Source: Macrostomum lignano
Taxonomy: Eukaryota
Length of the DNA: 64,000 bases
Assembly: GCA_002269645.1 (NCBI GenBank)
Contig: NIVC01001151.1
Coordinates: 186,001 to 250,000 of the forward strand
Direction of reading: 5' to 3'
Below the pieces are notes generated by a model. That model ran no database searches. It was not told the DNA's origin and worked only from the letters and a program-made list of their open reading frames with translations. Position 1 is the first letter of the stretch, and each line of letters starts with the position of its first letter. Positions 1-40,385 of this stretch are shown here, piece after piece. The position numbers and the translations under genes were made by a program.

Positions 1-739
1 CGGAATCGCTTGTCCGCAAAGTGAGGCTGATTCCATGTTCCACTTTAGCGTTGAAGATGGCAGTGCAGAATACCTCACAGCGAGGCGTGACTTCGTGTGG
101 AAGAGTCTGCTGGAGTCGGACTCAGCATGGAAGTTCATGTTCGATCCCGACCGAAAGCTGAATTTCCCATTCCTGCCCGACCACATGAGACACATTAAAC
201 TGGCATTCCCGTGGCGGGTGCCCTACAGGAGCTGCGACTGTGTCTTCATCAACTTTCACGCTCTGTACAAGGCGCTCCAACTCGAGGCGAGGAAGCTGAG
301 CGGAGATGATGAAGGAGTCAACACGTTGCTAGGAGACTTTGGTTCCACCAGACTGGACACTCAGGAGCTGCTGATGATGCTGCATTACTGCAGCGATGAG
401 GCGAAGCTGGTTGAGATCATTCACAGCAACAGACAGATGATTGTGGACACTGGACTGGCTGGGCCCGTGCTGAGGATCCTGGATGAGAGGGTGAGTTCTC
501 GCGATTTCTGTCCTGCTTGACTTTCTCGAATTTCGTCTTGCGCTGAGAAGCCGATGTGAAAATCGAAATTGCAGCCGGCACTGCGCCAGCGATGCGTTCG
601 AGCGACTTGGGCGAAGGTGGAGGAGCTGATCAGCCAGAGAGAGCTCTCATCGGCCGAGGAGCGGCGTCGGGTGGAGCTGAGGATGTGGAGAGCGAGGCAT
701 TTCCTGTGGGAGAAGGAGGGGATCGAGTCTGATGATTGA
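1..739 (+). CDS. 3' end of a second copy of the Mab-21/cGAS-like nucleotidyltransferase gene (partial; exons <1..490 and 575..739)
   Basis: Near-identical to 35545..36283 (offset 35544). Donor AGG|GTGAGT at 490/491, acceptor TTGCAG|CCG at 574/575, phase 0. Last exon PALRQRCVRATWAKVEELISQ...EGIESDD* (TGA 737-739). The tracked ORF tail VSSRDFCPA is probably intronic. Confidence 0.75.
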
Positions 740-8925: not shown

Positions 8926-8996
8926 GAAGACTGAGCTCGAGTTGTGTTTCTTTTCTGACTGTTTTGAGAATCTTGAGAGATGAGCGAAACACTAAA

Positions 8997-16265: not shown

Positions 16266-16324
16266 GCTCTCCCGTCCCCACCAGCTCAACCCAGTTCATC
16301 TCCTCGCACTTTCAGCCCGTCGCC

Positions 16325-22000: not shown

Positions 22001-25000
22001 CCTGGTGCCTCTGATGCCGCCCAGTTTCCAAGACGAGTCGCCGCAGGCGGTTGTTGTCGAATGCACGGCCGGATTGGCCAATCAGTTCGTGGCGCCGCTC
22101 CTCACGCCGGCCCAGTTCAAACGAGGCCAGGCGGACGCGCACTCGCCTTGGACACCGGAGGAGAGAGAGCGGCGAAGGCTGGCCTACCTGGGCGGCAGGT
22201 GAGGCAGTCGGATTGGATGAGAGGCCTGCCGGCTTTGCAGTGGGGCACTGGTTACTCAATTATCCTCGGGTTACTGTGGGATTCGAACCCCGGACGTCCC
22301 GTGGGTTACCTTCGCTTGTCCATGACGGGATCTTTCACCTCCGCTCTCTCACCCTCGACTCTCACCCTCCCTGCTCTCACCCTCCCTGCTCTCACCCTCC
22401 CTGCTCTCTCACCCTCTACTCACCCTCTGCTCTTACCCTCTGCTCTTACTCTCTCTCTACCCAACCTCAAGACTCGGACCCCCAACCGCACGACTCAAAA
22501 CCCCCCACCGAAAGACTCAAACTCCCAACCGCGAGACTCGAACCCCCAACCGCAAGACTCGAACCCCCAACCGCAAGACTCGAACCCCCAACCACAAGAC
22601 TCGAACCCCCAACCACAAGACTCGAACCCCCAACCGCAAGACTCGAATCCCCAACCGCAAGACTCGAACCCCCAACCGCAGGACTCGAACCCCCAACCGC
22701 AAGACAACGAACCCCCAACCGCAAGACTCGAACCTCTAACCGACTCCAGAGAGGCGCCCTCCAAGTCCGCGCCGCCGCCGCGCCTGGTCCCGGCGCCAAT
22801 CCACGTGCAGCCGCTGCCGCCCGGACAGCTCGGGCTGCCCCTGGCCGGACTGCTGCTGGCCGCCAGAATCCGAAGCGAAGTCGGCTGCGACTCGGCCGAG
22901 CTCACCTTGGCCTACCTTGAGGAGCGGAGGAAGGCCCTGTCCCCAGCCTCATCAGCGGCAGCTGAGCCCATAGACATCTCGCTGTGCGCCAGGCCTGAGG
23001 AGGCGGCCCTGACGGCAGCGCTGGCCAGCACAAAGCAGCCGGCTCTGCTCCAGTTTCAGCGCAGGTGGGCCTATCTGCTCAGATTCCACCCGACAAGGCG
23101 GCGACTCGAGCTTCGAGCATTCGCTCCCGAAGGCCTGTTCGCCGCTGCCCAGACTCTGCTGGCCCTGCTGCACGATCCCGGGCCTCCGCTGAGCGTTCGC
23201 TCCGTGCTGGATTATCCGAGATTTGAGTACCGCGGACTCATGCTAGACGTGGCCAGGAACATGCAGCCTCTGCCTGTGCTGCTCAAGATACTTGACGTCA
23301 TGGCCATGTACAAGCTCAACAAACTGCACCTGCACCTGTCCGATGATGAGGGCCTTCGGCTGCCCATCACCGACGCCTTCAAGCTGGCGAGCAGGCGGTG
23401 CCACGACCCCAGCGGGAAGCTGTGCCTGCCGCCTCAGCTGGGATCGCATCCCACCGATGGGAGACCGCCTGGGGTTGGGTACTACAGCTCTACTGAGTAT
23501 GCCCAGCTGCTCAAGTATGCTGCCGACAGGTTCATTGAGGTCATTCCTGAGGTCAGTGCTCTCTGATCCCCATCACTATCCCTCTGATCCCCATCATTTA
23601 TCCCTCTGATCCCCATCACTATCCCTCTGATCCCCATCATCATCCCACTGATCCTCATCATTATCTCACTGATCCCCATCATTATCCCCCTGATCCCCAT
23701 CATTATCCCTCTGATCCCCATCACTATCCCACTGATCCCCATCATCATCCCACTGATCCTCATCATTATCCCACTGATCTTCATCATTATCCCCCTGATC
23801 CCTCACCAACATCATTACACCCTCACCAACCCCACACCCAGCATCCCCATCAATCCCACACCCAGCATCCCCATAAATCCCACACCCAGCATCCCCATCA
23901 ATCCTACACCCAGCATCCCCATAAATCCCACACCCAGCATCCCCATCAACCCCACACCCAGCATCCCCATCAACCCCACACCCAGCATCCCCATCAATCT
24001 CACACCCATCATCCCACACCCATCATCCCACACCCAGCATCCCCATCAATCCCACACCCAGCATCCCCATCAATCCCACACCCAGCATCCCCATCAATCC
24101 CACACCCAGCATCCCATCTCCATCACCAGGTGGACATGCCAGCCCACACCCAGCATCCCATCTCCATCACCAGGTGGACATGCCAGCCCACGCCCACTCG
24201 CTGATCGCAGCCCACCGCCACCGAGCTCAGCTCACGGACCCCGGAGACCCCAGCAGGCCCGTCAGCGTGCAGAACTACTTCAACAACAGCCTGAACCCGT
24301 GCATGCCGGACACCCAGCAGCTGGTGCGCAGAGTGGTGTCTGACCTGGTCCGCCTGCACTCCCTGGCCGGCGTCCCGCTGAGCACCTTCAACTTTGGTGG
24401 CGACGAGCCCCCCGGAGACGCGTGGCAGGCCTCTCCAGCCTGCCAGCGACTGGGCCTGGGCAGCAGGGACTCCATCAACCGGCTGTTCTTGAGAACTGTG
24501 GCAGAGCAGGCCGGCAGGCACGGGCTGTCTCTGATGGGCTGGGAAGACGGCTACGTTGTCAAGGACTCGGACAAGAGGCCGTACAACCTTACTGAAGTTC
24601 TTGCCACTGCGGACCGGCGGCCTAACGGGTCTCTGGTGCTGAGCTGGCTGAACCAGATGGCATGGGGCTCTGGGACCTGGCGTACAAGTTTGCCAATCAG
24701 GGGTACAAAGTGAGTGGCATTTATGTTTGGTGACCGCCCTCCCAGATCCTCAGTTGCTGTGCCAGCATCCCAGATCCTCAGTTGCTGGGCCAGCCTCCCA
24801 GATCCTCAGTTGCTGTGCCAGCATCCCAGATCCTCAGTTGCTGTGCCAGCATCCCAGATCCTCAGTTGCTGGGCCAGCCTCCCAGATCCTCGGTTGCTGG
24901 GCCAGGCGGCCTCCCAGATCCTCGGTTGCTGGGCCAGCATCCCAGATCCTCAGTTGCTGGGCCAGCCTCCCAGACCCTCAGCAAGCCGAAATCCCCAGCT

Positions 25001-27487
25001 CACGATCTCAGCTCACCACCCCTCCGCAGGTGGTGCTGGCGCACGCCACCCACCTGTACCTGGACCACCAGCAGGAGCCGGATCCCGAGGAGCGCGGTCT
25101 CTACTGGGCCACGCGGTTCATCGACCTGCGCAAGGCGTTCTCGTATGACGCGGCCGACATCTACGCCAACATGCGGGAGGACATCATGGGGCAGCCGGTG
25201 AGCGGCCAAGGGACTGGGATTTCGGGACTGGGACTTCAAGACCGGGATTTCGGGACTGGCATTTCAGGACTGGGATTTCGAGACTCACGCCAAGTGCCGC
25301 ACCATCCCAGGTGGACGTGAAGGCCACCTGCTCGCAGCGCGGAGGCTGCGCCAGTCTCCATCAGCCCGGCAACATCATTGGCCTGAGCGGCGCTCTGTGG
25401 GGCGAGACTCTGCAGGCGGAGCAGCTGGCCCTCCCAATGCTGCTGCCGCGGCTGCTGGCTGTGGCCGAGCGGGCCTGGCACCGCGCCAGCTGGGAGGCCG
25501 CCAAGGACCCGCCGGCCCTGAGAGATGCGCTGCTGGCCGCTGACTGGGCCGCCTTCGTTGACGCGGTGAGCAGGCGGGAGCTGTCGCGGCTGTCCCGTCT
25601 GAGGATTCCGTTCAGCCTGCCGCCGCCTGCGGCTCTGCGCAGCCCGGCGTCCGGGAGGGTCCGCCTGAGCCACCAGATGCCGCACAATGTCCGCCTGCTG
25701 TACGCCTTTGCGGGCTCCGGCAGGGGCGAGCATTGGGAGGAGGCGGCGAGGCACGGGGACGAGGTTGCTGTGCCTGATGGAGCAGTGAGGATGCTGCTGA
25801 AGGCTGGGTGAGTGATCAGCTGGTTGCTGTGCCTGATGGAGCAGTGAGGATGCTGCTGAAGGCTGGGTGAGTGATCTGCTGGTTGCTGTGCCTGATGGAG
25901 CGCTGAGGCTGCTGCTGAAGGCTGGGTGAGTGATCTGCTGGTTCCTGTGCCTGATGGAGCAGTGAGGCTGGATGCTGCTGAAGGCTGGGTGAGTGATCTG
26001 CTGGTTCCTGTGCCTGATGGAGCAGTGAGGCTGGATGCTGCTGAAGGCTGGGTGAGTGATCTGCTGGTTGCTGTGTCTGATGGAGCAGTGAGGCTGGATG
26101 CTGCTGAAGGCTGGGTGAGTGATCTGCTGGTTGCTGTGCCTGATGGAGCAGTGAGGATGCTGCTGAAGGCTGGGTGAGTGATCTGCTGGTTGCTATGCCT
26201 GATGGAGCGCTGAGGCTGCTGCTGAAGGCTGGGTGAGTGATCTGCTGGTTCCTGTGCCTGATGGAGCAGTGAGGCTGGATGCTGCTGAAGGCTGGGTGAG
26301 TGATCTGCTGGTTGCTGTGTCTGATGGAGCAGTGAGGCTGGATGCTGCTGAAGTCTGGGTGAGTGATCTGCTGGTTGCTGTGTCTGATGGAGCAGTGAGG
26401 CTGGATGCTGCTGAAGGCTGGGTGAGTGATCTGCTGGTTGCTGTGCCTGATGGAGCGGTGAGGCTGCTGCTGAAGGCTGGGTGAGTGATCTGCTGGTTGC
26501 TGTGTCTGATGGAGCAGTGGGGCTGGGTGAGTGATCTGCTGGTTGCTGTGCCTGATGGAGCAGTGAGGCTGGGTGAGTGATCTGCTGGTTGCTGTGCCTG
26601 ATGGAGCAGTGAGGCTGGGTGAGTGATCTGCTGGTTGCTGTGCCTGATGGAGCAGTGAGGCTGGGTGAGTGATCTGCTGGTTGCTGTGCCTGATGGAGCA
26701 GTGAGGCTGGGTGAGTGATCTGCTGGTTGCTGTGCCTGATGGAGCAGTGAGGCTGGGTGAGTGATCTGCTGGTTGCTGTGCCTGATGGAGCAGTGAGGCT
26801 GGGTGAGTGATCTGCTGGTTGCTGTGCCTGATGGAGCAGTGAGGCTGGGTGAGTGATCTGCTGGTTGCTGTGCCTGATGGAGCAGTGAGGCTGGATGCTG
26901 CTGAAGGCTGGGTGAGTGATCTGCTGGTTGCTGTGTCTGATGGAGCAGTGAGGCTGGATGCTGCTGAAGGCTGGGTGAGTGATCTGCTGGTTGCTGTGCC
27001 TGATGGAGCGCTGAGGCTGCTGCTGAAGGCTGGGTGAGTGATCTGCTGGTTGCTGTGCCTGATAGAGCGGTGATCGATTTCGGTTATCAATTATGGATTT
27101 CGGATATCCATTATCGATTTCGGTCACTAATTATCGATTTTGGTTGACTATTATCGATTTCGGTCATCAATTATTGATTTAGGTTATCAATTATCGATCA
27201 GGATCACTAACGCTCTCTCCCGCTCCCTCCACGCCAGCTTCGGGGACCCCGGCAACCGCCATGAGAGCTACATCGAGAGTCGCACCGTCCAGCTGCCGCT
27301 GACGGCTTCATCAGCCTCCGGCCAGCTTCTCCACGAGCCCGGCCGGCCGCAATCGGCGAATGGCGTCGAAGGGGCGGCCAAGTCGACGGCCCTGCGCTGG
27401 CTGCTGCTGCTGCTGCTGGCAGCGGCTGCTGTGGGCCTCACCTGCCTCGCCTGCTGCTGGGCCAGCCTGCCTCCGAGAGGCTCCTGA
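19020..27487 (+). CDS. Chitobiase-type GH20 beta-N-acetylhexosaminidase; 8 exons: 19020..19131, 20906..21367, 21977..22198, 22750..23551, 24174..24709, 25030..25197, 25311..25807, 27238..27487 (two single-base frameshifts)
   Basis: Motifs WRMYF..HVNGYLHYLEPT, FPNWY, DYPRFEYRGLMLDVARN, KLNKLHLHLSDDEG, IEVIPE|VDMPAH, FGGDE, ERGLYWATR, GALWGE, PRLLAVAERAWH. N-terminal hydrophobic leader and C-terminal hydrophobic tail. With +1 nt at each of two G-runs the exons sum to 3051 nt (1016 aa) and all splice phases agree. Confidence 0.85.
19195..20110. repeat. 53-55-bp minisatellite in hexosaminidase intron 1
   Basis: Unit ACAATAGGCCCCTGTTGTATCTATACTGCATATTGCAGTCAGCT(CT)GTGTGTACT. Confidence 0.9.
20335..20700. 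repeat. 20-bp ATGACTCACTCAATGACCAT array (intron 1)
   Basis: Read directly. Confidence 0.85.
21420..21950. repeat. 46-47-bp minisatellite (intron 2)
   Basis: Unit AGTAGAAATGCAAGACAATAGCATCGTATTTTAATTATCCTACTTAC. Confidence 0.9.
22462..22738 (-). repeat. 21-bp array (CAAGACTCGAACCCCCAACCG), ~13 copies, intron 3
   Basis: Read directly; the minus strand reads GGTTGGGGGTTCGAGTC (tRNA T-arm/B-box-like). Confidence 0.85.
23560..24170. repeat. ATCCC-rich arrays filling intron 4
   Basis: CTGATCCCCATCATTATCCC-type units, then 24-bp CATCCCCATCAATCCCACACCCAG units. Confidence 0.85.
25764..27062 (+). repeat. 46/59/63-bp array made of the exon-7 3' end plus its 5' splice site, ~23 copies
   Basis: Each unit is GTTGCTGTGCCTGATGGAGCAGTGAGG(...)GCTGG|GTGAGTGATCTGCTG; the first unit is coding (VAVPDGAVRMLLKAG). 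Confidence 0.9.
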
Positions 27488-28570: not shown

Positions 28571-29829
28571 CAATAAAGTGTCTCTGCAGTGCTTCTGGTT
28601 GACTAACTTGAAAGACTTACGACACAAATTTTACCAAAGCTTGCAGTCACACACAAACATGTCGTGCATTGGCGAGATGGGAAGTTTTCAGATTTTTAAC
28701 ACTGAGTGACTGAGTGTCGACTGTCGGGAAATTCTGTCTTAAAATGTTTGTTCTCTGTCGCCCTCGGCTGTTTTTCAGTCCCCTCCCTGAGCCTTGTTTT
28801 GTTTCTCCCTCGCTCTGTACGTACATAGCTAGCGTTCTTCTCTACCCTCAATTATCGATCGGTTAGCACCCCCTCCCCCCAGTCGGCCCTCCTTGGGCTC
28901 TTGCGTGTTGAACCCATTTGATTTCTTATCTCTTCCACTTCCCCTCCCGCCGCCTCTGAAATAAATACAATAATATGCGCTGCACAGAGGTCTGAATCTT
29001 AATTCTGGTCCTTTCCTTTTCTATACTAGCATCTTCAAATCGAGGTAAGATAAGTATCTTAAGATAAGATAAGTATTTAAGATACTTAAGATAAGTAAGA
29101 TTTCACAACAATCGAGATCAACCTCGTTCGCTGCACTATTAAAAAGCTTAGATCGACTAGTTTATCAGCTCATTTTATCTGCATTCGTCTGCTCGTCTTC
29201 GGGGGTCCGCTGAGCTTATTCGCTTCGTCAGCTCTGAGTTTTGGTCATCCATTTTCAGTCTTCTCAGCAGGATATGCGTCTGCTCGGATCTGGTCTCTTC
29301 ATTTGTCTTGTTTCGCTGGATTTCGTGCTGGACGGTCTCTGCTTCTCTTCGTGGTCAAGGCTTCAGACTCCGCGTTCACTCAGGATTCAGCAGGACGGAC
29401 TGGGCAGCAACCTGAAGAAGAAATCGATTCCTCCTAAAGCTAAGTTTTCGTTTGGAGCTGTTTTCATTTTACTGTGCTGTTCAAGTTTCAAATCATTTAT
29501 TGATGCCTTTCTACTCATTGCATGCTAAAACACCCGTATAGATTTTCACTCTGCCATTTTGCTTGCGGGTTCCTCATACAGATAAACTTCCCTTTGCTGT
29601 GCATGGGTCCTATTGCACTCCCCTCTGAACTCTCTATTTCTTGCTGTGTGGTTGCTGCTCGTTGCTGCTCGTTGCTGCTAGGGAATACGAAATCCCGAGT
29701 TTTGCCAATCCCGGGATTGTTGGGATATCCCGGACTTTGCCAATCCCCGGATCCCGGGATTAAAAAAGTTTCCAATCTTTGTTGGTGCAATTTTGGTTTA
29801 CGAAGCAACACCAGCACACAAAAGGCCCG

Positions 29830-32800
29830 ATGGCTGAGGACGCCGAGCTGCAGGCAGCCACCGAGCTGACACGCAGCGGCTGGGACGTCAACGCGACCGA
29901 CTCTGACGGCTGCTCGGCCCTGCACAACGCAGTGCAGCTCGGGAACTGCCGGGCTTCCGAGCGCCTCATCCAAGCAGCTGCTGACGTCGACCTGCAGATC
30001 AGCGCCGGCTCCAGCCCGCTGCACATGGCGGTTCAGCGAGACCATCTCCAGCTGGCGGAGCTGCTGCTGAGGTCGCAGGCCGATCCCAACCTGCTGGCTG
30101 GAGACGGCCAGACGGCCATTCAGATGGCCATCCGAGCTGGCAACGACGACCTGCTGCGGCTGCTGCTGGCGGCCGGTGCTGACGCGAACTGGCCGACCGG
30201 TGAGCCGCCGCTGCTCACCGCCATCTGTCTGGGACGGGCTGAGGCCGCGAGGCTGCTGGTCTCGGCCGGTGCCGACGCGAGCGTCCGAGCCCGGACAGTG
30301 TCCGAGGTCACTGCGCAGGTGCTTCAGACAGAAGAGGCGGAGCAGCTGAAGGAGAGTTTGCCGATGCCTGCGATTCTCGCTGCAGCTAGCCTGGGACAGC
30401 GGGAGATTCTGGTCCACCTGCTGGCATGTGGAGCCGACTGCGACACGAGAGACGGCAAGGGGGCGACCGTTTTGCACCATACGGCTCGCAAGGACGTGGA
30501 GATGCTGGCGATCGCTCTGTCCGTTCAGCAGGAGATCGACTGTCTGAATGACAAAGGCTCATCTGCCCTCCACTTTGCTGAATCGGAAGAAGCAGTAAAT
30601 CAGCTTCTTTTGTTAGGAGCTGACATCGAAAGTAGAAACATCTTCGGCAATTCGCCACTTGTTGTGGATGCCAGCGATGGTTGCCTAAATGTAGTGGCAA
30701 AGCTGATCAACTGTGGAGCAAGCATCGATCTGCAGACCAAGTATGGCTGGTCACCACTGAATGCTGCCGCATTCAATGGCCACTTGGAAGTTGTGGCCAA
30801 GCTGATCGACTGTGGAGCAAGCATCGATCTGCAGAACAATAATGGCTGGTCACCACTGAACAGTGCCGCAGACAAAGGCCACTTGCAATTAGTGGCCAAG
30901 CTGATCGACTGTGGAGCAAGCATCGATCTGCAGAACAATGGGGGCTGGTCACCACTGAACAATGCCGCATATGAAGGCCACTTGGAAGTTGTGGCCAAGC
31001 TGATCGACTGTGGAGCAAGCATCGATCTGCAGCAAAATGATGGCGGGTCACCACTGAATGTTTCCGCACAGAATGGCCACTTGGAAGTAGTGGCCAAGCT
31101 GATCGACTGTGGAGCAAGCATTGATCTGCAGAACAAAAATGGCGACTCACCACTGTACATTTCCGCATTCAATGGTCACTTGCAAGTAGTGGCCAAGCTG
31201 ATCGACTGTGGAGCAAGCATCGATCTGCAGAGCAAGTATGGCTGGTCACCACTGAACATTGCCGCACAGAATGGCCACTTGGAAGTAGTGTCCAAGCTGA
31301 TCGACTGTGGAGCAAGCATCGATCTGCAGCAAAATGATGGCGGGTCACCACTGTACATTGCCGCACAGAATGGCCACTTGGAAGTAGTGTCCAAGCTGAT
31401 CGACTGTGGAGCAAGCATCGATCTGCAGCAAAATGATGGCGTGTCACCACTGAATGTTGCCGCACAGAATGGCCACTTGGAAGTAGTGGCCAAGCTGATC
31501 GACTGTGAAGCAAGCATCAATCTGCAGAAGAAGAATGGCGTGTCACCACTGCTCGTTGCATCCTTTCAAGGTCACTTGGAAGTAGTGTCCAAGCTGATCG
31601 ACTGTGGAGCAAGAATCGATCTGCAGCAAAATGATGCCCGGTCACCACTGTACAGTGCCACATTCAATGGCCACTTGCAAGTTGTGGCCAAGCTGATCGA
31701 CTGTGGAGCAAGAATCGATCTGCAGGACAATGATGGCTGGTCACCACTGTACAGTGCCGCAGAGAAAGACCACTTGCAATTAGTGGCCAAGCTGATCGAC
31801 TGTGGAGCAAGCATCGATCTGCAGAACAAGAATGGCGACTCACCGCTGAATATTGCAGCATTCCAAGGGCACATACAAGTAGTGGCCAAGCTGATCGACT
31901 GTGGAGCAAGCATCAATCTGCAGAACAATAATGGCTGGTCACCACTGAACAGTGCCGCAGACAAAGGCCACTTGCAAGTAGTGGCCAAGCTGATCGACTG
32001 TGGAGCAAGCATCGATCTGCAGCAAAATGATGGCGGGTCACCACTGAATGTTTCCGCACAGAATGGCCACTTGGAAGTAGTGGCCAAGCTGATCGACTGT
32101 GGAGCAAGCATTGATCTGCAGAACAAAAATGGCGACTCACCACTGTACATTTCCGCATTCAATGGTCACTTGCAAGTAGTGGCCAAGCTGATCGACTGTG
32201 GAGCAAGCATCGATCTGCAGAGCAAGTATGGCTGGTCACCACTGAACATTGCCGCACAGAATGGCCACTTGGAAGTAGTGTCCAAGCTGATCGACTGTGG
32301 AGCAAGCATCGATCTGCAGCAAAATGATGGCGGGTCACCACTGTACATTGCCGCACAGAATGGCCACTTGGAAGTAGTGTCCAAGCTGATTGACTGTGGA
32401 GCAAGCATCGATCTGCAGCAAAATGATGGCGTGTCACCACTGAATGTTGCCGCACAGAATGGCCACTTGGAAGTAGTGGCCAAGCTGATCGACTGTGAAG
32501 CAAGCATCAATCTGCAGAAGAAGAATGGCTATTCACCACTGAACATTGCCGCACAGAATGGCCACTTGGAAGTAGTGGCCAAGCTGATCGAATGTGAAGC
32601 GAGTACCGATCTGCAGAACAATGCTGGCTGGTCACCACTTAACAGTGCCGCATTAAATAACCACTTGCTAGTAGTGGCCAAGCTGATCGACTGTGGAGCA
32701 AGCATCGATCTGCAGAACAATAATGGCTGGTCACCACTGAACAGTGCCGCAGACAAAGGCCACTTGCAAGTAGTGGCCAAGCTGATCGACTGTGGAGCAA

Positions 32801-34051
32801 GCATCGATCTGCAGAACAATAATGGCTGGTCACCACTGAACAGTGCCGCAGACAAAGGCCACTTGCAATTAGTGGCCAAGCTGATCGACTGTGGAGCAAG
32901 CATCGATCTGCAGAACAATGATGGCTGGTCACCACTGAATGTTGCCGCACAGAATGGCCACTTGCAAGTAGTGGCCAAGCTGATCGACTGTGGAGCAAGC
33001 ATCGATCTGCAGCAAAATGATGGCTGGTCACCACTGAACATTGCCGCACAGAATGGTCACTTGCAAGTCGTGGCCAAGCTGATCGACTGTGGAGCAAGCA
33101 TCGATCTGCAGAACAAGTATGGCTGGTCACCACTGAACATTGCCGCACAGAATGGCCACTTGCAAGTTGTGGCCAAGCTGATCGACTGTGGAGCAAGCAT
33201 CGATCTACAGAACAATGAAGGCTGGTCACCACTGTACAGTGCCGTAGTAAGAGGTCACTTGCAAGTTGTGGCCAAGCTGATCGACTGTGGAGCAAGCATC
33301 GATCTGCAGAACAATAATGGCAACTCACCACTTAATGCGGCGGCCCAGAAGGGACATTTTGATGTTGCCAATAAGCTTATTTGCTGTGGAGCAAATATGC
33401 ATTTGCAGGATAATTTTGGATTCGCACCACTACACAATGCGGTGCAAGAAGGACACTTGAAAGTGGTGACCATTTTAGTTGAAAGTGGTGCAGGCATTGG
33501 TCTGGAAATTGACAGTTCTGGCGAGTTCATGCCCGAGTCTAAGAATGATTTGTGTTTTCCTGATGCTTCAGCTGAAGCAGCTCTCTCGGTGAACAATCCA
33601 GTGCACCTCGCCGCGGAATTCGACCATCCTGATGTTCTCCAATGTTTAATTAATAATTATAAGAACGTGAATAAACTAAGTCGTGTGACCCCACTGCATG
33701 TTTCTTGCCTGTGCAATCTTGCTTATATTGCGAAGCAGCTGTTGCGTTCCAGAGCTGATGCAGAACTCCGTGATGAAGATGGCTTAACAGCGGCAGACAT
33801 TGCTGCAATTCGTGGCTCACCTGAGCTTTATTCGGTATTTTGCGACTTATCAAATGATGAGAAACCGTCTGAACCTGTATCATTGCTGAATGTGGCTTCT
33901 CAGCAGTTACTGACGCACATTCACCTGGTTTGCTGCTTTGGAAATGCAGAGTTCGTGCAAGGCCTCTGCAGCAAAATGGTCGGAATTCGCGATCCAATTC
34001 GCGTGCCTGTTTTAGACTTCAAGTAAGTTTAGTAACCTACTCCAAACTTAG

Positions 34052-34135
<84 letters not shown>

Positions 34136-36283
34136 CAGTCAGTCAACTTCATTCCCACAGCGAGTCCGAGTTCTCAAAGCGGCTCCACGAGTCCCTCAGC
34201 AGCTCAGGATTCACCCGCATCAACGCGGCTGTTCAGAGCGGCACTGCGGCTGCCTTGGAGAAGATTCTGAGACAGAGTCTGGGCAGCCAATGCTTTTTGG
34301 TCGGCAGCTTCGCCGATGGCTGGGGCAACTGCCTCACAGGAATCTGCGGTCGGACTGATGCGGACTCCGACATGGATGTCACTGAGTTTCAGACGGGATT
34401 GCAGCTGCACATTGCGGGAAGTGGAGTACACGACGAAATGGAGAGAAAAGTAACGTGCAAAGAAGTCGAGTTCAGTGACGGTCACATCAAGCACCAAATA
34501 GACTGTGAGTTCTTGTCTGACTTCATAAAAAGGTACAACTTATGTTAAGTTGTTGATTTAAAAGTTTGCATGCCACTCCCATCCAACTCATTCAACTGCA
34601 GCCTCCAAGCCGAACGTCGCCACCTCTGGCATGACTTTGAGGCCTTCAGTCGACATTGTGAGAGCCATCCCCTGCTGCTTTTATCCTGAATTCGAAATTT
34701 TCCGACCCGGCTACAAGTCGTGCATTCCCGAGGACATTTTATCGGCCATTCGATCTGACACCCAGTGCCACGCGGTCGCGGCAGCTCCTCCAGGTCTCGA
34801 GGGCCAGTGCATGCGATTTAGCACTACACTCATGGAGAGGGCGCTCATGCACAGTCTCACTACACTTCAAGGTCAGCTCTTCGTCATGCTCAAGTACATC
34901 ATCAAACGAGTGATTGTGAAGCGAGTCAAGGGTCTGAAGACCTACCACGCAAAGAACTTGCTCCTCTACATGCTGGACAGGACACCGGATGACGAGTGGC
35001 GACCGCACAATCTGATCAAGCTGGTGAGACAGTCGCTGCAGCTGCTGCTCGACTCTCTCACTGACTCAAACAGCAGTGAGCAGCAGTGCATGCAGCACTT
35101 CTTCATGAGAGACGCCGCCATCTACTTGCGCAAGGACCACGAGGGAAAGACGAAGATCAAAGAAGTTGTGAGTCAAGTGATGGAGGAGCTGCCGCATCTG
35201 ATGTCGGAGTTTGAGCAGACATTGATGAAGAACTCACCGAGTGTGATCGAATTTCACCCGTTTCTCATTATGCCGTTAACTGATGAGCTCAGCATTCCTG
35301 AATCAGACACAGAGTTCGAGTATCACCAGATCTATGATGCAGTGAAGAGAGCTTTAGAGATGCTGAGCAAAGAGATTTCGAGCAGTGATGAAGCGAGTCA
35401 CGTGCAGCAGCTCGGCTCGCTGCTCAATCGGATTCCAGACTGCGCCAGAACTGCCAGAGAGAGTCTGAGAGCTCTGATGGGGCTCAGAGAAGGAAAACCG
35501 ATAGGCTCAGTTGTTGATGCTGCGAGTTCCACCGATGTGAGCAGCGGAATCGCTTGTCCGCAAAGTGAGGCTGATTCCATGTTCCACTTTAGCGTTGAAG
35601 AAGGCAGTGCAGAATACCTCACAGCGAGGCGTGACTTCGTGTGGAAGAGTCTGCTGGAGTCGGACTCAGCATGGAAGTTCATGTTCGATCCCGACCGAAA
35701 GCTGAATTTCCCATTCCTGCCCGACCACATGAGACACATTAAACTGGCATTCCCGTGGCGGGTGCCCTACAGGAGCTGCGACTGTGTCTTCATCAACTTT
35801 CACGCTCTGTACAAGGCGCTCCAACTCGAGGCGAGGAAGCTGAGCGGAGATGATGAAGGAGTCAACACGTTGCTAGGAGACTTTGGTTCCACCAGACTGG
35901 ACACTCAGGAGCTGCTGATGATGCTGCATTACTGCAGCGATGAGGCGAAGCTGGTTGAGATCATTCACAGCAACAGACAGATGATTGTGGACACTGGACT
36001 GGCTGGGCCCGTGCTGAGGATCCTGGATGAGAGGGTGAGTTCTCGCGATTTCTGTCCTGCTTGACTTTCTCGAATTTCGTCTTGCGCTGAGAAGCCGATG
36101 TGAAAATCGAAATTGCAGCCGGCACTGCGCCAGCGATGCGTTCGAGCGACTTGGGCGAAGGTGGAGGAGCTGAGCAGCCAGAGAGAGCTCTCATCGGCCG
36201 AGGAGCGGCTGCGGGTGGAGCTGAGGATGTGGAGAGCGAGGCATTTCCTGTGGGAGAAGGAGGGGATCGAGTCTGATGATTGA
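29830..36283 (+). CDS. Ankyrin-repeat / cGAS-like (Mab-21) nucleotidyltransferase fusion (cGLR-like), ~2044 aa; exons 29830..34022, 34161..34504, 34602..36034, 36119..36283
   Basis: Junctions AA|GTAAGT..CCCACAG|C (phase 2), T|GTGAGT..CTGCAG|CC (phase 1), AGG|GTGAGT..TTGCAG|CCG (phase 0) join three tracked ORFs plus an untracked last exon in frame (6135 nt). NTase motif VGSF..(x20)..DMD, third acid in PSVDIVRAI, Mab-21 C-lobe motifs MRFSTTLMERAL, MLKYIIK, LKTYHAKNLL, CMQHFF. Confidence 0.85.
30646..33417 (+). repeat. Coding array of 28 tandem 99-bp (33-aa) ankyrin units with very high internal identity
   Basis: Units start every 99 bp from 30646; scaffold GHL[EQ]VVAKLIDCGASIDLQ is almost invariant. 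Confidence 0.95.
34050..34135. repeat. (GATA)n microsatellite in intron 1 of the ANK-cGLR gene
   Basis: Read directly. Confidence 0.95.
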
Positions 36284-36661
36284 CAGGTGAGTGACTGAGA
36301 CTGATGATTGACAGGTGAGGGACTGAGGCTGATGATTGACAGGTGAGTGACTGAGGCTGATGATTGACAGGTGAGTGACTGAGGCTGGTGAGTGACTGAG
36401 GCTGGTGAGTGACAGGTGAGTGACTGAGGCTGATGACTGACAGGTGAGTGACTGAGGCTGATGACTGACAGGTGAGTGACTGAGGCTGATAAGTGACAGG
36501 TGAGAGACTGAGGCTGATGATTGACAGATGAGTGAATGAAGCAAATTTTTCAGCCTCCCCATTTCCCATTGCAGGCCCAGCCGCACCGCAGCTCAAGGAT
36601 GTCCGGCTTTGCAGAATTTTCATCGACTTTTGTGCGCCGCGTCTTTTGCCCGTTTTGCCGA

Positions 36662-36970
36662 GCTGACTGACCCTCAGCTGACTGACCCTCAGCTGACTGA
36701 CCCCCAGCTGACTGACCCTCAGCTGACTGACCCCCAGCTGACTGACCCCAAACTGACTGACCCTCAGCTGACTGACCCCCAGCTGACTGACCCCCAGCTG
36801 ACTGACCCCCAGCTGACTGACCCCAGCTGACTGACCCCAGCTGACTGACCTCAGCTGACTGACCCCCAGCTGACTGACCTCAGCCGACTGACCCCCAGCT
36901 GACTGACCTCAGCTGACTGACCCCCAGCTGACTGACCCCCAGCTGACTGGCCTCAGCTGACTGACCCCGC
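36662..36970. repeat. 14-15-bp CTGACTGACCCCCAG array (~21 copies)
   Basis: Only ~2 copies at the paralogous site, 1353-1380. Confidence 0.9.
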
Positions 36971-37829
36971 ACAGGAACGTACTGCATTGCAGCTTTAAGC
37001 CTCAGTGGGGCAGCTGCAGTACCGCTAAGCTGAAATGCAGTGCAAAATGCAGTGTGCCATGGCTCAGCGATAAGATTTTGTGAGCCTCACCACTTGCTGC
37101 AGCTGCCATTCCGCCTCCATGTCTGTCTTGTGAAGGCAGATTCCAAATCCCAGATTCCAAATCCCACATCCCAAATCCCAGATCCCAAATCCTAGATTCC
37201 AAATCCCAGATTCCTAATCCCAGATCCCAAATCCCAGATCCCATATCCCAGACTCCAAATCCCAGATTCCAAATCCCAGATCCCGCATCCCAGATCACAA
37301 ATCCCAGATCGCAAATCCCAGATCCCATATCCCAGAAGCAGTCAGTTGAAATCTCAGCTTCAGTGCTGACGCTACTCATGCCTTCTGTAATGCTGGCTCA
37401 GCAGCTCTCAGACTTTATTTTGGTCAGTTCTGCTTTTGCTGACTTGATTTTCCTGTCAGTTGCTTCCGTGCTGCAAATTGCTGCTTTTTTGAGCTGTGCT
37501 CAAATTCTTCCTGTTCTCTCATGTGCCGCCGTTTTTAACTGTTTTGTTTTACTTGTTTCAGTGTTTGTTTAAATGTCCATTTCAAATTTGTTAAAATGCT
37601 GTGTCAGGCTCTGCCACTCCCATTGCTACTCAAAGTAGAGCAGGCTGATTCTGTGCTCTAGTGGCTCAGGCATCTCAACTGACCTCAGGCCACGGCTGTC
37701 AGCATTTCATTGTTTATTGCTGAGCAGCTGGGACTCAGGCTGGGATCTCCCCAGATCCTCAGGGCTGGTGCAATCCACTGGGGTCCTCGCGATTCTTCCC
37801 AACGTCTGTCTCTTTGGTTTCTGTGGTGT

Positions 37830-40385
37830 TCTCCCTGATCCCTGTGATCTCCCTGATCCCCGTGTTCAGCTCCCTAATCCCTGTGTTCTCCCTTATCCCT
37901 GTGTTCTCCCTGATCCCTGATCCCCGTGTTCAGCTCCCTAATCCCTGTGTTCTCCCAGATCCCTGTGTTCTCCCTGATCCCTGTGATCTCCCTAATCCCT
38001 GTGTTCTCCCTGATCCCTGTGATCTCCCTGATCCCTGTGATCTCCCTGATCCCTGTGTTCTCCCTGATCCCTGTGATATCCCTGATCCCTGTGTTCTCCC
38101 TGATCCCTGTGTTCTCCCTGATCCCTGTGATCTCCCTGATCCCTGTGATCTCCCTGATCCCCGTGTTCTCCCTGATCCCTGTGATATCCCTGATCCCTGT
38201 GTTCTCCCTAATCCCTGTGTTCTCCCTAATCCCTGTGTTCTCCCTGATCCCTGTGTTCTCCCTAATCCCTGTGTTCTCCCTGATCCCTGTGATCTCCCTG
38301 ATCCCCGTGTTCAGCTCCCTAATCCCTGTGTTCTCCCTAATCCCTGTGTTCTCCCTGATCCCTGTGATCTCCCTGATCCCTGTGTTCCCCCTGATCCCTG
38401 TGATATCCCTGATCCCTGTGTTCTCCCTGATCCCTGTGTTCTCCCTGATCCCTGTGATATCCCTGATCCCTGTGTTCTCCCTGATCCTTGTGTTCTCCCT
38501 GATCCCTGTGATCTCCCTGATCCCTGTGTTCTCCCTGATCCCTGTGTTCTCCCTGATCCCTGTGTTCTCCCTGATCCCTGTGATATCCCTGTGTTCTCCC
38601 TGATCCCTGTGATATCCCTGTGTTCTCCCTGATCCCTGTGATATCCCTGTGTTCTCCCTGATCCCTGTGTTCTCCCTAATCCCTGTGTTCTCCCTGATCC
38701 CTGTGATCTCCCTGATCCCTGTGTTCTCCCTGATCCCTGTGTTCTCCCTGATCCCTGTGTTCTCCCTGATCCCTGTGATATCCCTGATCCCTGTGTTCTC
38801 CCTGATCCCTGTGTTTTCCCTGATCCCTGTGTTCTCCCTGATCCCTGTGATATCCCTGATCCCTGTGTTCTCCCTAATCCCTGTGATATCCCTGATCCCT
38901 GTGATATCCCTGATCCCTGTGTTCTCCCTGATCCCTGTGTTCTCCCTGATCCCTGTGTTCTCCCTGATTCCTGCTGTGTTCTCCCTGATCCCTGTGATCT
39001 CCCTGATCCCTGTGTTCTCCCTGATCCCTGTGTTCTCCCTGATCCCTGTGTTCTCCCTGATTCCTGCTGTGTTCTCCCTGATCCCTGTGATATCCCTGAT
39101 CCCTGTGATCTCCCTGATCCCTGTGTTCTCCCTGATCCCTGTGATATCCCTGATCCCTGTGTTCTCCCTAATCCCTGTGATATCCTTGATCCCTGTGATA
39201 TCCCTGATCCCCGTGTTCTCCCGGATCCCTGTGATATCCCTGATCCCTGTGTTCTCCCTAATCCCTGTGTTCTCCCTAATCCCTGTGTTCTCCCTGATCC
39301 CTGTGTTCTCCCTAATCCCTGTGTTCTCCCTGATCCCTGTGATCTCCCTGATCCCCGTGTTCAGCTCCCTAATCCCTGTGTTCTCCCTAATCCCTGTGTT
39401 CTCCCTGATCCCTGTGATCTCCCTGATCCCTGTGTTCCCCCTGATCCCTGTGATATCCCTGATCCCTGTGTTCTCCCTGATCCCTGTGTTCTCCCTGATC
39501 CCTGTGATATCCCTGATCCCTGTGTTCTCCCTGATCCTTGTGTTCTCCCTGATCCCTGTGATCTCCCTGATCCCTGTGTTCTCCCTGATCCCTGTGTTCT
39601 CCCTGATCCCTGTGATATCCCTGTGTTCTCCCTGATCCCTGTGATATCCCTGTGTTCTCCCTGATCCCTGTGATATCCCTGTGTTCTCCCTGATCCCTGT
39701 GTTCTCCCTGATCCCTGTGTTCTCCCTGATCCCTGTGTTCTCCCTAATCCCTGTGTTCTCCCTGATCCCTGTGATCTCCCTGATCCCTGTGTTCTCCCTG
39801 ATCCCTGTGTTCTCCCTGATCCCTGTGTTCTCCCTGATCCCTGTGATATCCCTGATCCCTGTGTTCTCCCTGATCCCTGTGTTTTCCCTGATCCCTGTGT
39901 TCTCCCTGATCCCTGTGATATCCCTGATCCCTGTGTTCTCCCTAATCCCTGTGATATCCCTGATCCCTGTGATATCCCTGATCCCTGTGTTCTCCCTGAT
40001 CCCTGTGTTCTCCCTGATCCCTGTGTTCTCCCTGATTCCTGCTGTGTTCTCCCTGATCCCTGTGATATCCCTGATCCCTGTGATCTCCCTGATCCCTGTG
40101 TTCTCCCTGATCCCTGTGTTCTCCCTGATTCCTGCTGTGTTCTCCCTGATCCCTGTGATATCCCTGATCCCTGTGATCTCCCTGATCCCTGTGTTCTCCC
40201 TGATCCCTGTGATATCCCTGATCCCTGTGTTCTCCCTAATCCCTGTGATATCCTTGATCCCTGTGATATCCCTGATCCCCGTGTTCTCCCGGATCCCTGA
40301 AATCTCCCTGATCCCTGTGTTCTCCCTGATCCCTGAAATCTCCCTGATTGCCGTGTTCTCCCTGATCCCTGTGTTCTCCCTGACC
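37830..40385. repeat. 2.5-kb 18-bp minisatellite (CCCTGATCCCTGTGTTCT)
   Basis: Read directly; source of the 841-aa GIRENT artefact ORF. Confidence 0.95.

What the first reader, a model, noticed from the sequence alone, without database searches (positions are those of the whole stretch)
30646..33417. Natural DARPin-like library: 28 near-identical ankyrin units variable almost only at ligand-contact positions
Seen: the scaffold (SPL, GHL[EQ]VVAKLIDCGASIDLQ) is nearly invariant even at synonymous sites. Variation concentrates in the hairpin (Q-xxx-G-[W/G/D/V/Y/N]) and helix 1 ([N/Y/L]-[A/S/N/V/I]-AA-[F/D/Y/Q/E/L]-[N/K/E/Q]). Known: these are the positions randomised in designed ankyrin repeat proteins, and high-internal-conservation ANK/WD/TPR arrays in fungal NLRs change specificity by repeat shuffling. 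Inference: a concertedly evolving, reshufflable recognition surface wired to a cGAS-like output, i.e. a possibly undescribed variable-receptor system in an invertebrate.
Basis: partly seen in the sequence, partly recalled or inferred. Interest (0 to 1): 0.9.

Follow-up and report, generated by a model that had tools for sequence, protein, structure and literature searches.

The report
Hypervariable ankyrin array on flatworm cGAS-like enzyme
A gene of the flatworm Macrostomum lignano joins 26-28 almost identical ankyrin repeats, which differ mainly at the residues that normally touch ligands, to a cGAS-like signalling enzyme; sister genes show the same pattern, so this looks like a fast-evolving receptor family not yet described in animals.

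Summary
Window 30637-33507 carries a gap-free 99-bp (33-aa) ankyrin array inside one 4.2-kb exon: 26 core units plus decaying end units. Variation sits at repeat positions 1, 2, 3, 5, 9, 10, 13 and 14 (hairpin tip and helix 1). Non-synonymous change there runs about 2.3 times the array-wide synonymous rate (p about 1e-4), while the scaffold is under purifying selection.

The array is spliced to a Mab21/cGAS-fold nucleotidyltransferase. The GS, DxD and third Asp residues are conserved across the family. The organism is Macrostomum lignano, and the gene belongs to a large lineage-specific ANK-cGLR family (84 clusters at 50% identity).

Li et al. 2023 cloned five family members as cGLRs. None is marked active. 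I found no paper that mentions the hypervariable arrays.

A paralogous locus gives the cleanest support. Two tandem genes there carry 11 and 16 units. Their scaffold is invariant (pS 0.01), and only positions 1, 2, 3, 5, 13 and 14 vary (pN 0.46).

The closest analogue is the highly internally conserved ANK/WD/TPR repeats of fungal NLRs. Ligand, enzyme product, downstream receptor and any immune role are all inferred. The DARPin analogy is only partly exact, and I found no evidence of somatic diversification. Verdict: a new variant of known kinds, of high interest.

The parts
29830..34022 (+). Exon 1 of the ANK-cGLR gene (1397 codons plus 2 bases). It is ankyrin repeat throughout. The ATG is at 29830 and the donor at 34023 (GTAAGT).
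   Evidence: ORF 29779-34026; Pfam Ank_2 E = 5e-268; splice model gives a 6135-nt in-frame CDS of 2044 aa.
29830..30636 (+). N-terminal divergent ankyrin repeats (about 8), not homogenised.
   Evidence: 33-aa register print-out; Pfam ANK hits.
30637..30735 (+). First, degenerate unit of the array (NIFGNSPLVVDASDGCLNVVAKLINCGASIDLQ).
30736..33309 (+). Core array of 26 units of 99 bp. Consensus NNDGWSPLNIAAQNGHLQVVAKLIDCGASIDLQ. There are 20 distinct DNA units and 18 distinct combinations of hypervariable residues.
30991..31539 (+). First copy of a 549-bp (5.5-unit) block that recurs 990 bp downstream with one mismatch.
   Evidence: Lag-990 exact runs of 410 and 138 bp.
31981..32529 (+). Second copy of the 549-bp intra-array duplication.
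33310..33507 (+). Two decaying terminal units of the array.
33508..34022 (+). Further divergent ANK repeats and the linker to the enzyme domain.
34023..34160 (+). Intron 1 (phase 2, GT..AG), containing a (GATA)21 microsatellite at 34052-34135.
34161..34504 (+). Exon 2, the nucleotidyltransferase core. Gly-Ser is at 34303-34308 and Asp-x-Asp (DMD) at 34369-34377.
   Evidence: Translation. GS and SDxD are at least 90% conserved in 30 family members. The exon 2/3 and 3/4 junctions agree with the public model P0001.
34602..36034 (+). Exon 3. It holds the third catalytic-type Asp (SVDIV, 34652-34654), the Mab-21_C helical domain (about 34880-35125) and a family-specific C-terminal domain (35243-36034).
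   Evidence: Pfam PF20266 at 31.9 bits, cut-off 24.1. hhalign to mouse cGAS gives 90% probability. AF2 and Foldseek results.
36119..36283 (+). Exon 4, a helical tail. The stop codon TGA lies inside the first unit of a 28-bp minisatellite.
1..738 (+). 3' end (part of exon 3, intron 3, exon 4) of a near-identical tandem copy of the gene. Its array lies off the window. The flanks 1-9400 parallel 35545-43900.
   Evidence: Only 4 nucleotide differences across the stretch up to the stop codon (1-738). Self-BLAST and tblastn.

Best explanation
This is a germline-encoded, rapidly diversifying recognition module fused to a cGAS-like receptor (cGLR) enzyme. It is one member of a large Macrostomum-specific ANK-cGLR family.

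Shown:
- One gene (2044 aa) encodes about 38 ankyrin repeats followed by a Mab21/cGAS-fold nucleotidyltransferase. The enzyme keeps the GS, DxD and third-Asp residues and carries a family-specific C-terminal domain.
- The central 26 repeats have been homogenised or expanded recently by unequal crossing-over or gene conversion. They differ mainly at hairpin-tip and helix-1 positions, which line the concave groove of ankyrin solenoids.
- Amino-acid change at those positions exceeds the synonymous rate.
- Sister genes repeat the pattern and differ in unit number and unit types.

Inferred:
- The groove binds a non-nucleic-acid ligand, probably a protein or peptide of foreign or altered-self origin. 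The protein is strongly acidic (pI 5.0).
- Binding activates the enzyme, either by relieving autoinhibition or by clustering.
- The enzyme then makes a nucleotide second messenger that triggers a defence response.
- Repeat shuffling plus diversifying selection supplies new specificities, as in fungal NLRs with highly internally conserved repeats.
For: Array anatomy and position-specific variation.

Selection: by tree-based counts, hypervariable codons show 57 non-synonymous changes on 20.8 sites. That compares with 27 synonymous changes on 22.8 sites array-wide, a ratio of 2.3 (binomial p = 1.5e-4). Scaffold non-synonymous change is 0.53 per site.

Recent intra-array duplication.

Replication in paralogues:
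- L001 holds two tandem genes with 11 and 16 units. All 27 scaffold codons are invariant in protein, with one synonymous polymorphism (pS 0.010). Codons 1, 2, 3, 5, 13 and 14 have pN 0.46 with 2-3 nucleotide differences per codon. The flanks are 96.6% identical.
- L003 holds a 19-unit array with hypervariable pN 0.305 against rest pS 0.179.
- All six L001 variable positions fall within the nine most variable positions of the window array. By my hypergeometric calculation the chance of that is about 8e-5.

Enzyme: the AF2 model (pLDDT 73) has as top PDB matches oyster Cv-cGLR1, cGAS, MAB21L1 and MB21D2. Mab-21_C scores above Pfam's threshold. hhalign to mouse cGAS gives 90%. GS, SDxD and D are near-invariant in 30 members.

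Family size and restriction to M. lignano. Li et al. 2023 treated family members as cGLRs. The NTase core has pI 6.4 and the whole protein 5.0, against pI > 8.5 for nucleic-acid-sensing cGLRs in Li et al..
Against: - No functional data exist. The five M. lignano enzymes cloned by Li et al. carry no 'active' note in Table S3, and the 15 active enzymes came from other phyla. Catalysis is therefore unproven.
- cGAS and STING are reported lost in the flatworms examined so far (Schistosoma), and no STING or other receptor was looked for in M. lignano.
- Within the hypervariable codons themselves dN/dS is only about 1.2, because synonymous differences are also raised there. Recombination among units can inflate parsimony counts.
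- Surface positions of any ankyrin repeat are the least constrained, so part of the pattern is expected without adaptive diversification.
- The exon 1 to exon 2 junction rests on splice consensus, frame and paralogue architecture, not on a transcript.
- The GS-to-DxD spacing (20 residues) is longer than in cGAS, and that loop is modelled with low confidence.
Confidence: 0.55

Rival explanations
1. Neutral coding minisatellite. A genome that is extremely prone to tandem-repeat expansion amplified a 99-bp in-frame unit. The scaffold looks conserved because the copies are young. The variable positions are simply the structurally unconstrained surface residues of ankyrin repeats, and there is no recognition function.
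For: The window carries 110 TRF rows of minisatellites. A 549-bp block was duplicated very recently. dN/dS computed inside the hypervariable codons alone is about 1.2, not far above 1. In-frame amplification keeps the ORF open automatically.
Against: If the variable sites were neutral, their divergence should equal synonymous divergence. It is 2.3-fold higher in the window (p = 1.5e-4) and about 46-fold higher in L001, with multi-nucleotide codon differences beside an invariant scaffold. The same positions vary in three or four independent arrays. Scaffold dN/dS of 0.5-0.6 shows selection on the protein.
Confidence: 0.12
2. A housekeeping scaffold or adaptor. The long ANK solenoid binds the animal's own proteins, or acts as an elastic or structural element as in ankyrins, NOMPC or TRPA1. 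Each differing repeat provides a docking site for endogenous partners that regulate a Mab21-type enzyme with a non-immune role, like MAB21L1/2.
For: Long ANK solenoids commonly bind many self partners. Canonical ankyrins and NOMPC are top sequence matches. Mab21L proteins have developmental roles (Li et al.). The M. lignano enzymes were not reported active with nucleic-acid PAMPs. The neighbouring genes are not immune genes.
Against: Housekeeping adaptors are conserved between paralogues and species. Here the family is lineage-specific, massively expanded (84 clusters) and tandemly duplicated, with unit number and binding-face residues changing between copies that are 97% identical elsewhere. 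Catalytic residues that Mab21L proteins lack are conserved (Li et al.).
Confidence: 0.18
3. The same receptor architecture, but used for recognition of conspecifics or for reproductive conflict (allorecognition, sperm or seminal-fluid interactions in this hermaphrodite) rather than for pathogen sensing.
For: The fungal counterparts with identical repeat dynamics (HET-D/E) act in allorecognition (Dyrka 2014). The evolutionary signature seen is equally expected under conspecific conflict.
Against: There is no expression or genetic evidence either way. cGLR enzymes characterised so far act in anti-microbial immunity.
Confidence: 0.1
4. Assembly artefact. The array, its internal block duplication and the tandem gene copy come from mis-assembly of reads or haplotypes.
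For: Near-identical repeats and a near-identical tandem copy about 35.5 kb away are typical trouble spots. No public protein model contains this array.
Against: The array has perfect 99-bp periodicity with zero indels and an intact 1415-codon frame, and 20 distinct units among 26. Comparable arrays occur in an independent public assembly, GCA_002269645.1, at other family loci. Copy number could still be somewhat off.
Confidence: 0.04

Closest known systems
Highly internally conserved (HIC) ANK/TPR/WD repeat domains of fungal NLR/STAND proteins, e.g. Podospora anserina HET-D/E, the NWD family and Pa_3_8560 (Paoletti 2007; Dyrka et al. 2014, PMC4986451)
   Same: Near-identical tandem repeats. 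Variation is confined to a few positions on the binding face and is under positive selection. Repeat number and order change between alleles and paralogues, with concerted evolution by recombination. ANK arrays of 7 to more than 16 units are reported.
   Different: The signalling partner here is a Mab21/cGAS-type nucleotidyltransferase, not a NACHT or NB-ARC NTPase. No NOD domain is present. The repeats are N-terminal to the enzyme. The host is an animal, where Dyrka et al. found HIC repeats to make up only 0.8% of repeat domains. Identity to consensus in the window array is 83.7%, just under their 85% criterion, whereas the L001 arrays exceed it. Polymorphism among individuals was not tested.
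Animal cGAS-like receptors fused to ankyrin repeats (Li et al. 2023, Cell; preprint PMC9980059), e.g. Stylophora pistillata ANK-cGLRs
   Same: An ANK repeat module on the same polypeptide as a cGLR-type NTase. Members of this very M. lignano family (PAA86972, PAA45980, PAA57558, PAA93208, PAA68676) were included in their screen of 140 representative cGLRs as numbers 89-93.
   Different: That paper says nothing about internal repeat conservation, hypervariable positions or repeat-number change. It states that most platyhelminths lack cGLRs. The M. lignano constructs begin at the enzyme domain, with the ANK part omitted, and none is marked active. The Macrostomum proteins also carry a roughly 300-aa C-terminal domain with no structural match.
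Designed ankyrin repeat proteins (DARPin libraries; Binz et al. 2003, cited from my own knowledge)
   Same: An identical 33-aa consensus scaffold with diversity restricted to hairpin and helix-1 surface positions. Positions 2, 3, 5, 13 and 14 are variable in both. The L001 arrays vary at 1, 2, 3, 5, 13 and 14 only.
   Different: This array is natural, with 26-28 units rather than 2-3 internal repeats. Position 33 is fixed here, while 1, 9, 10 and 18 vary. The canonical TPLH histidine (position 9) is replaced by N/Y/L. There are no dedicated capping repeats; the array is flanked by divergent natural repeats.
Variable lymphocyte receptors of jawless fish, and other diversified invertebrate receptors (FREPs, Dscam, Sp185/333); cited from my own knowledge
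   Same: A solenoid repeat scaffold whose concave face carries the diversity, in a multigene or multi-cassette arrangement.
   Different: VLRs are assembled somatically from LRR cassettes. Here nothing indicates somatic change, the repeats are ANK, and diversity is germline, among repeats and among paralogues.

Membership tests
cGLR / Mab21-superfamily nucleotidyltransferase | cGAS/Mab21 bilobal NTase fold | tested here: met
   The AF2 model of the 90%-identical paralogue P0002 has pLDDT 73 and pTM 0.75. Its Foldseek PDB top hits are 8gjw Cv-cGLR1, many cGAS entries, MAB21L1 and MB21D2 (E 1e-5 to 5e-4, target TM about 0.5). Pfam Mab-21_C scores 31.9 bits against a cut-off of 24.1. hhalign to mouse cGAS gives 90% over WRLSFS...Mab21_C.
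cGLR / Mab21-superfamily nucleotidyltransferase | Catalytic residues present: G[GS], then [DE]x[DE], then a third acidic residue. These are absent in Mab21L1/2. | tested here: met
   The sequence reads GS...DSDMDV...SVDIV. G-S, S-D-x-D and the later D are at least 90% conserved in 30 family members. The spacing between GS and DxD is 20 residues, longer than in cGAS. The Pfam Mab-21 NTase model PF03281 itself does not hit.
cGLR / Mab21-superfamily nucleotidyltransferase | Ligand-dependent synthesis of a nucleotide second messenger | not testable with these tools
   Five family members were cloned by Li et al. (numbers 89-93), but none is marked among the 15 active enzymes.
cGLR / Mab21-superfamily nucleotidyltransferase | A cognate receptor (STING or other) in the same genome | not tested
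   The literature reports STING loss in Schistosoma. M. lignano is absent from Li et al. Table S5.
HIC-repeat recognition domains (fungal NLR type) | High internal conservation of tandem repeats (about 85% or more over at least 100 aa) | tested here: inconclusive
   The window array has mean identity to consensus of 83.7%, pairwise 76.7% and scaffold 89.5%, so it is borderline. The L001 arrays match at 91-95% and clearly qualify.
HIC-repeat recognition domains (fungal NLR type) | Hypervariable positions on the binding face with an excess of non-synonymous change | tested here: met
   The mapping to the concave face rests on the known ANK and DARPin structures, not on a structure of this protein.
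HIC-repeat recognition domains (fungal NLR type) | Repeat-number or order polymorphism among alleles and paralogues | tested here: inconclusive
   Met for paralogues: 11 versus 16 units in tandem copies whose flanks are 96.6% identical, plus the intra-array block duplication. Alleles and individuals could not be tested, and the array of the upstream tandem copy lies outside the window.
NLR / STAND receptors | Central NACHT or NB-ARC NTPase domain | tested here: not met
   Pfam finds only ANK families and Mab-21_C in the 2044-aa product. The gene starts directly with ANK repeats, so it is not an NLR.
DARPin-like diversity scheme | Diversity restricted to positions 2, 3, 5, 13, 14 and 33 of the 33-aa module | tested here: inconclusive
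   Five of the six positions are among the nine most variable, and the entropy concentration has p = 0.0017. However, position 33 is invariant and 1, 9, 10 and 18 also vary.

The most novel reading that the evidence does not exclude
Macrostomum lignano has built a large germline repertoire of intracellular receptors, comprising dozens of tandemly duplicating ANK-cGLR genes. In each, a recombining ankyrin array with hypervariable groove residues sets the specificity for non-nucleic-acid ligands, and a cGAS-like enzyme converts binding into a nucleotide signal. This would be an animal counterpart of the fungal HIC-repeat NLR strategy, and the first case in which a cGLR's specificity is supplied by an appended, fast-evolving repeat module. 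A more extreme version cannot be excluded from sequence alone: the multi-nucleotide codon differences beside an invariant scaffold might reflect targeted or somatic diversification. I rate that at about 0.03 or less.
Probability: 0.35. Interest if true: 0.85.

Novelty: new variant of a known kind. Interest (0 to 1): 0.72.

Why it matters
Only a few cGLRs have known ligands, and those are all double-stranded nucleic acids. What the thousands of others sense is an open question. A cGLR family whose specificity appears to lie in an exchangeable, hypervariable ankyrin groove offers a direct handle on non-nucleic-acid sensing. The groove residues predict the binding site, and natural unit variants supply a ready-made specificity series.

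The finding would also show that the 'concerted evolution plus diversifying selection' repeat strategy of fungal NLRs arose independently in an animal, on a different signalling chassis. It happened in a phylum thought to have lost most canonical innate sensors. M. lignano is a transgenic, RNAi-tractable laboratory model, so the prediction can be tested.

There is also a practical point for annotation. Public gene models splice out or miss these arrays. P0015 keeps 3 of 27 units and merges two genes, and no public model contains the window array. The family's true architecture is therefore invisible in protein databases.

Tried and rejected
- Searching the protein database with the whole ANK exon returned only generic ankyrin proteins (48% identity or less) and no model containing this array. 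It was uninformative for paralogous arrays.
- A profile search of PDB sequences with an alignment that still contained ANK parts was swamped by ankyrins and DARPins. I repeated it with ANK-free members.
- Exact look-ups of P0001 and P0002 in assemblies found nothing. As a result, I could not compare the same locus in another assembly or recover the array of the closest paralogue.
I used the 90%-identical P0002 instead.
- Scanning annotated paralogue proteins for HIC arrays found only three. This proved misleading, because gene models splice the arrays out.
- A JGI metagenome scan for a 36-nt scaffold motif gave no hits.
- A four-gamete test between hairpin types and helix types showed no violation. 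There is therefore no direct proof of recombination within units. The evidence for recombination is the block duplication and the unit-number differences.
- Repeat finder output on the array was redundant.
- The C-terminal 264-aa domain, although confidently modelled, has no PDB fold match, so its role stays unknown.
- I considered and rejected three readings. It is not an NLR, since there is no NOD domain. It is not a pseudogene, since the 6.1-kb CDS is intact with conserved catalytic residues. It is not a nucleic-acid sensor of the cGAS type, since the pI is acidic.


Full report
**1. What is at the coordinates**

Tandem Repeats Finder reports a single coding-size array at 30691-33336: period 99 bp, 26.7 copies, 87% matches and no indels. 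The array lies inside a 1415-codon open frame on the + strand, 29779-34026. Pfam identifies this frame as ankyrin repeats throughout (Ank_2 E = 5e-268).

I printed the protein in 33-residue register, with position 1 as the residue after ...DLQ. This numbering coincides with the DARPin module DxxGxTPLHLAAxxGHLEIVEVLLKxGADVNAx. In this register the units start at 30637+99k. There are 26 core units (30736-33309), one degenerate unit before them and two decaying ones after them.

**2. Is the variation positional, and more than chance?**

Among the 26 core units there are 20 distinct DNA sequences. Twelve positions never change amino acid: 6-8 (SPL), 16, 20, 22, 23, 24, 26, 28, 32 and 33. Entropy ranks 13 > 3 > 5 > 1 > 10 > 14 > 18 > 9 > 2. 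Mean pairwise identity is 89.5% over the 25 scaffold positions and 36.7% over positions 1, 2, 3, 5, 9, 10, 13 and 14.

Nei-Gojobori pooling gives dN 0.48 and dS 0.40 for the hypervariable codons, and dN 0.052 and dS 0.087 for the scaffold. The few synonymous sites inside the hypervariable codons make their own dS noisy. I therefore also counted changes on a neighbour-joining tree with Fitch reconstruction.

- Hypervariable codons: 57 non-synonymous changes on 20.8 sites (2.75 per site).
- All codons: 27 synonymous changes on 22.8 sites (1.2 per site).
- The ratio is 2.3, with one-sided binomial p = 1.5e-4.
- Scaffold non-synonymous change: 0.53 per site.

A hand count of the minimum number of mutations (distinct alleles minus one, from the table) gives a similar ratio of about 2.2. 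Recombination among units can inflate the parsimony counts, so I treat the excess as real but moderate.

The six DARPin-randomised positions (2, 3, 5, 13, 14, 33; from my own knowledge of Binz et al. 2003) hold 8.57 of 20.07 bits of entropy (permutation p = 0.0017). The match is 5 of 6. Position 33 is an invariant Gln, and positions 1, 9, 10 and 18 vary although DARPin libraries keep them fixed. The scaffold is not 'nearly invariant at synonymous sites' (pS 0.08; 13 of 25 codons are polymorphic at the third position).

**3. Evidence of reshuffling inside the array**

A 549-bp block (30991-31539, 5.5 units) recurs exactly 990 bp downstream (31981-32529) with a single mismatch. This is the signature of a very recent unequal exchange. 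A four-gamete test between hairpin types and helix types gave no violation, so recombination within units is not demonstrated.

**4. The gene**

Canonical GT-AG introns join four exons in frame into a 6135-nt CDS of 2044 aa:
- exon 1, 29830-34022
- exon 2, 34161-34504
- exon 3, 34602-36034
- exon 4, 36119-36283

The exon 2/3 and 3/4 junctions agree with the public model P0001 (UniProt A0A1I8IHJ4, 99% identical). The exon 1/2 junction is inferred from splice consensus, reading frame, and full-length paralogues that carry ANK repeats and the enzyme in one protein (P0052, P0010 and others).

**5. Organism and family**

Of the 30 database hits to the C-terminal 647 aa, 26 are named Macrostomum lignano; the other four are unnamed metaclust or JGI metagenome entries. 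An exhaustive profile search finds 84 clusters (at 50% identity) with E < 1e-30 and 999 with E < 1e-3. All of the strong hits I checked by name are M. lignano. The next relatives, at E about 1e-14, are roughly 700-aa Mab-21 proteins, one of them from the clam Mercenaria, with both Pfam Mab-21 domains. This is therefore a large, lineage-specific expansion.

**6. Is the output 'cGAS-like'?**

- Pfam Mab-21_C is above threshold (31.9 bits against 24.1).
- A family profile hits cGAS and a cGLR1 entry in PDB sequences weakly (E about 1e-3).
- hhalign to mouse cGAS (sequence taken from Li et al. Table S3) gives 90% probability over the WRLSFS...Mab21_C region.
- An AlphaFold2 model of the 90%-identical paralogue P0002 has pLDDT 73 and pTM 0.75. 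Its best PDB matches are oyster Cv-cGLR1 (8gjw), many cGAS structures, MAB21L1 and MB21D2.
- The sequence carries GS (34303-34308), DSDMD (Asp-x-Asp at 34369-34377) and SVDIV (Asp at 34652-34654). G-S, S-D-x-D and the later Asp are at least 90% conserved across 30 family members.

These residues are the ones that distinguish active cGLRs from Mab21L1/2. Two caveats apply. The GS-to-DxD spacing is longer than in cGAS, and that loop is modelled with low confidence.

The whole protein is acidic (pI 5.0, NTase core 6.4). Nucleic-acid-sensing cGLRs have pI > 8.5 according to Li et al..

The last roughly 300 residues form a confidently modelled domain (pLDDT 89, pTM 0.88) with no structural match in the PDB (best E = 0.74).

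**7. What the literature already knows**

Li et al. 2023 (PMC9980059) report that a minority of cGLRs are fused to ANK or TPR repeats, and that 'most platyhelminthes' have no cGLR apart from Mab21-like proteins. Their Table S3 lists five M. lignano proteins, numbers 89-93, which are clearly members of this family; number 91 equals P0018. The constructs start at the enzyme domain, and none carries the note that marks the 15 active enzymes.

Dyrka et al. 2014 (PMC4986451) describe highly internally conserved ANK/TPR/WD repeats in fungal NLRs. Those repeats show repeat-number polymorphism and positive selection on the concave face. The authors found such repeats to be rare in metazoans, at 0.8%.

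Full-text searches combining Macrostomum, cGAS/cGLR/Mab21 and ankyrin found no paper describing hypervariable ANK arrays on cGLRs. Wu et al. 2014 report loss of cGAS and STING in Schistosoma.

**8. Replication in paralogous loci (the strongest evidence)**

Locus L001 comes from the public assembly GCA_002269645.1 (NIVC01001606.1), fetched through paralogue P0015. It contains two tandem genes. The annotated 871-aa model merges them and splices out most repeats.
- Copy A has 11 units and copy B has 16.
- The flanks of the two copies are 96.6% identical.
- Across 25 units, all 27 scaffold codons are invariant in protein and carry a single synonymous polymorphism (pS 0.010).
- Codons 1, 2, 3, 5, 13 and 14 have pN 0.46, with 2-3 nucleotide differences per codon.
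- Some unit types, such as the 'AY' helix, occur only in copy B.

All six variable positions fall within the nine most variable positions of the window array. By my hypergeometric calculation the chance of that is about 8e-5.

Locus L003 holds a further gene with a 19-unit array (84% matches). Position 5 is by far the most variable there, and hypervariable pN is 0.305 against a rest-of-unit pS of 0.179.

Other members (P0052, P0010) have ordinary diverged repeats. The family therefore spans a continuum from freshly homogenised to decayed arrays.

In the window itself, bases 1-738 are the 3' end of a second, near-identical tandem copy (4 nucleotide differences), and its downstream flank is duplicated too. 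Tandem duplication is a recurring feature of the family.

**9. Interpretation**

The data fit a germline recognition module that evolves by unequal exchange and gene conversion together with diversifying selection on groove residues, fused to a cGLR-type enzyme.

Shown:
- the anatomy of the array and gene
- the positional excess of amino-acid change
- recent rearrangement
- differences between paralogues
- the enzyme fold and conserved catalytic-type residues

Inferred:
- that the groove binds a ligand, which I propose is a protein or peptide given the acidic protein and the ANK groove
- that binding activates the enzyme
- that a nucleotide messenger and a defence output follow

The main rivals are:
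- a neutral coding minisatellite in a genome saturated with tandem repeats (110 TRF rows in this window), contradicted by the pN/pS contrasts
- a self-binding scaffold role
- conspecific recognition rather than pathogen recognition
- mis-assembly, which is unlikely given zero indels, the intact frame and similar arrays in an independent assembly

**10. Verdict**

The 'DARPin-like library on a cGAS-like output' description is apt as an analogy. Diversifying selection and reshuffling have support from sequence. Function is untested, and part of the 'undescribed' claim falls, because the ANK-cGLR family is already catalogued.

The novelty lies in combining fungal-NLR-type repeat dynamics with a cGLR chassis in an animal. 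I rate it a new variant of known kinds, interest 0.72.

Noticed in passing
window 35243-36034 (and the equivalent region in all family members): A conserved C-terminal domain of about 264-300 aa follows the Mab21 fold. Its motifs include HPF, RLPDCAR.ARE.LRAL, SRGI.W, DSAWKF and NFDAL. It is modelled with high confidence (pLDDT 89, pTM 0.88) but has no significant structural match in the PDB (best E = 0.74). In the profile search, the ~700-aa relatives matched only the NTase/Mab21_C part. It could be an effector, oligomerisation or regulatory domain.
   Followed up: partly
L001 6001-25445 (NCBI GCA_002269645.1 NIVC01001606.1): The public gene model for P0015 (871 aa) merges two tandem ANK-cGLR genes and treats 24 of the 27 repeat units as intron. 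No public model contains the window's array. Annotation pipelines systematically mishandle these arrays, so database proteins understate the family's architecture.
   Followed up: yes
window 1-9400 versus 35545-43900: A segmental tandem duplication. The 3' end of a near-identical gene copy and about 8 kb of minisatellite-rich downstream flank are repeated about 35.5 kb apart. The shared minisatellites (18-mer, 20-mer, CTGT) have very different copy numbers in the two copies; the 18-mer has 30 versus 141 copies.
   Followed up: partly
window 36269-36539 and 725-1232: The gene's stop codon (GAT GAT TGA) lies in the first unit of a 28-bp minisatellite, GAGGCTGATGATTGACAGGTGAGTGACT. Every unit of it contains a GGTGAGT donor-like motif and an in-frame TGA. 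Its copy number differs between the two gene copies (about 10 versus 18).
   Followed up: no
window, whole: Extreme density of minisatellites, with 110 TRF rows in 64 kb. Many arrays run to 0.3-2.5 kb with periods of 14-63 bp. Some create long spurious ORFs on both strands, e.g. 25361-27127(-).
   Followed up: no
P0203 (L004 10001-18307), P0196, P0186: Some annotated family members carry extra domains: a C-terminal caspase (Peptidase_C14) in P0203, WSC plus RING in P0196, and an AAA_33/zeta-toxin-like kinase in P0186. These may be real effector fusions or merged neighbouring genes, as happened with P0015.
   Followed up: partly
P0041 (Aedes aegypti LOC110674132, 1642 aa): An insect protein with a Pfam NACHT hit has a long run of near-identical ANK units (...TAQNEGWTPLHYASYKGLLEVVKVLIDNGANVD...) that differ at a few hairpin and helix-1 positions. 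This is another animal case of highly internally conserved ANK repeats, here on an NLR-like chassis.
   Followed up: no
window 47814-49088 (+): An intact 424-aa ORF encoding a Tc1/mariner-type transposase (Sleeping Beauty HTH, HTH_Tnp_Tc3_2, DDE_3).
   Followed up: no
window 16226-17518 (+), 21908-23566 (+), 55766-57184 (-): Neighbouring coding pieces: a RING-variant (MARCH-type) domain ORF, a glycosyl hydrolase family 20 exon, and a weak otopetrin-like ORF. None is an obvious immune gene.
   Followed up: no
P0019, P0025 (JGI metagenome contigs of about 1.7 kb): Two family members (about 43% identical to the window protein) come from environmental metagenome contigs rather than from the M. lignano genome. 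This suggests relatives in other, unsampled organisms.
   Followed up: no
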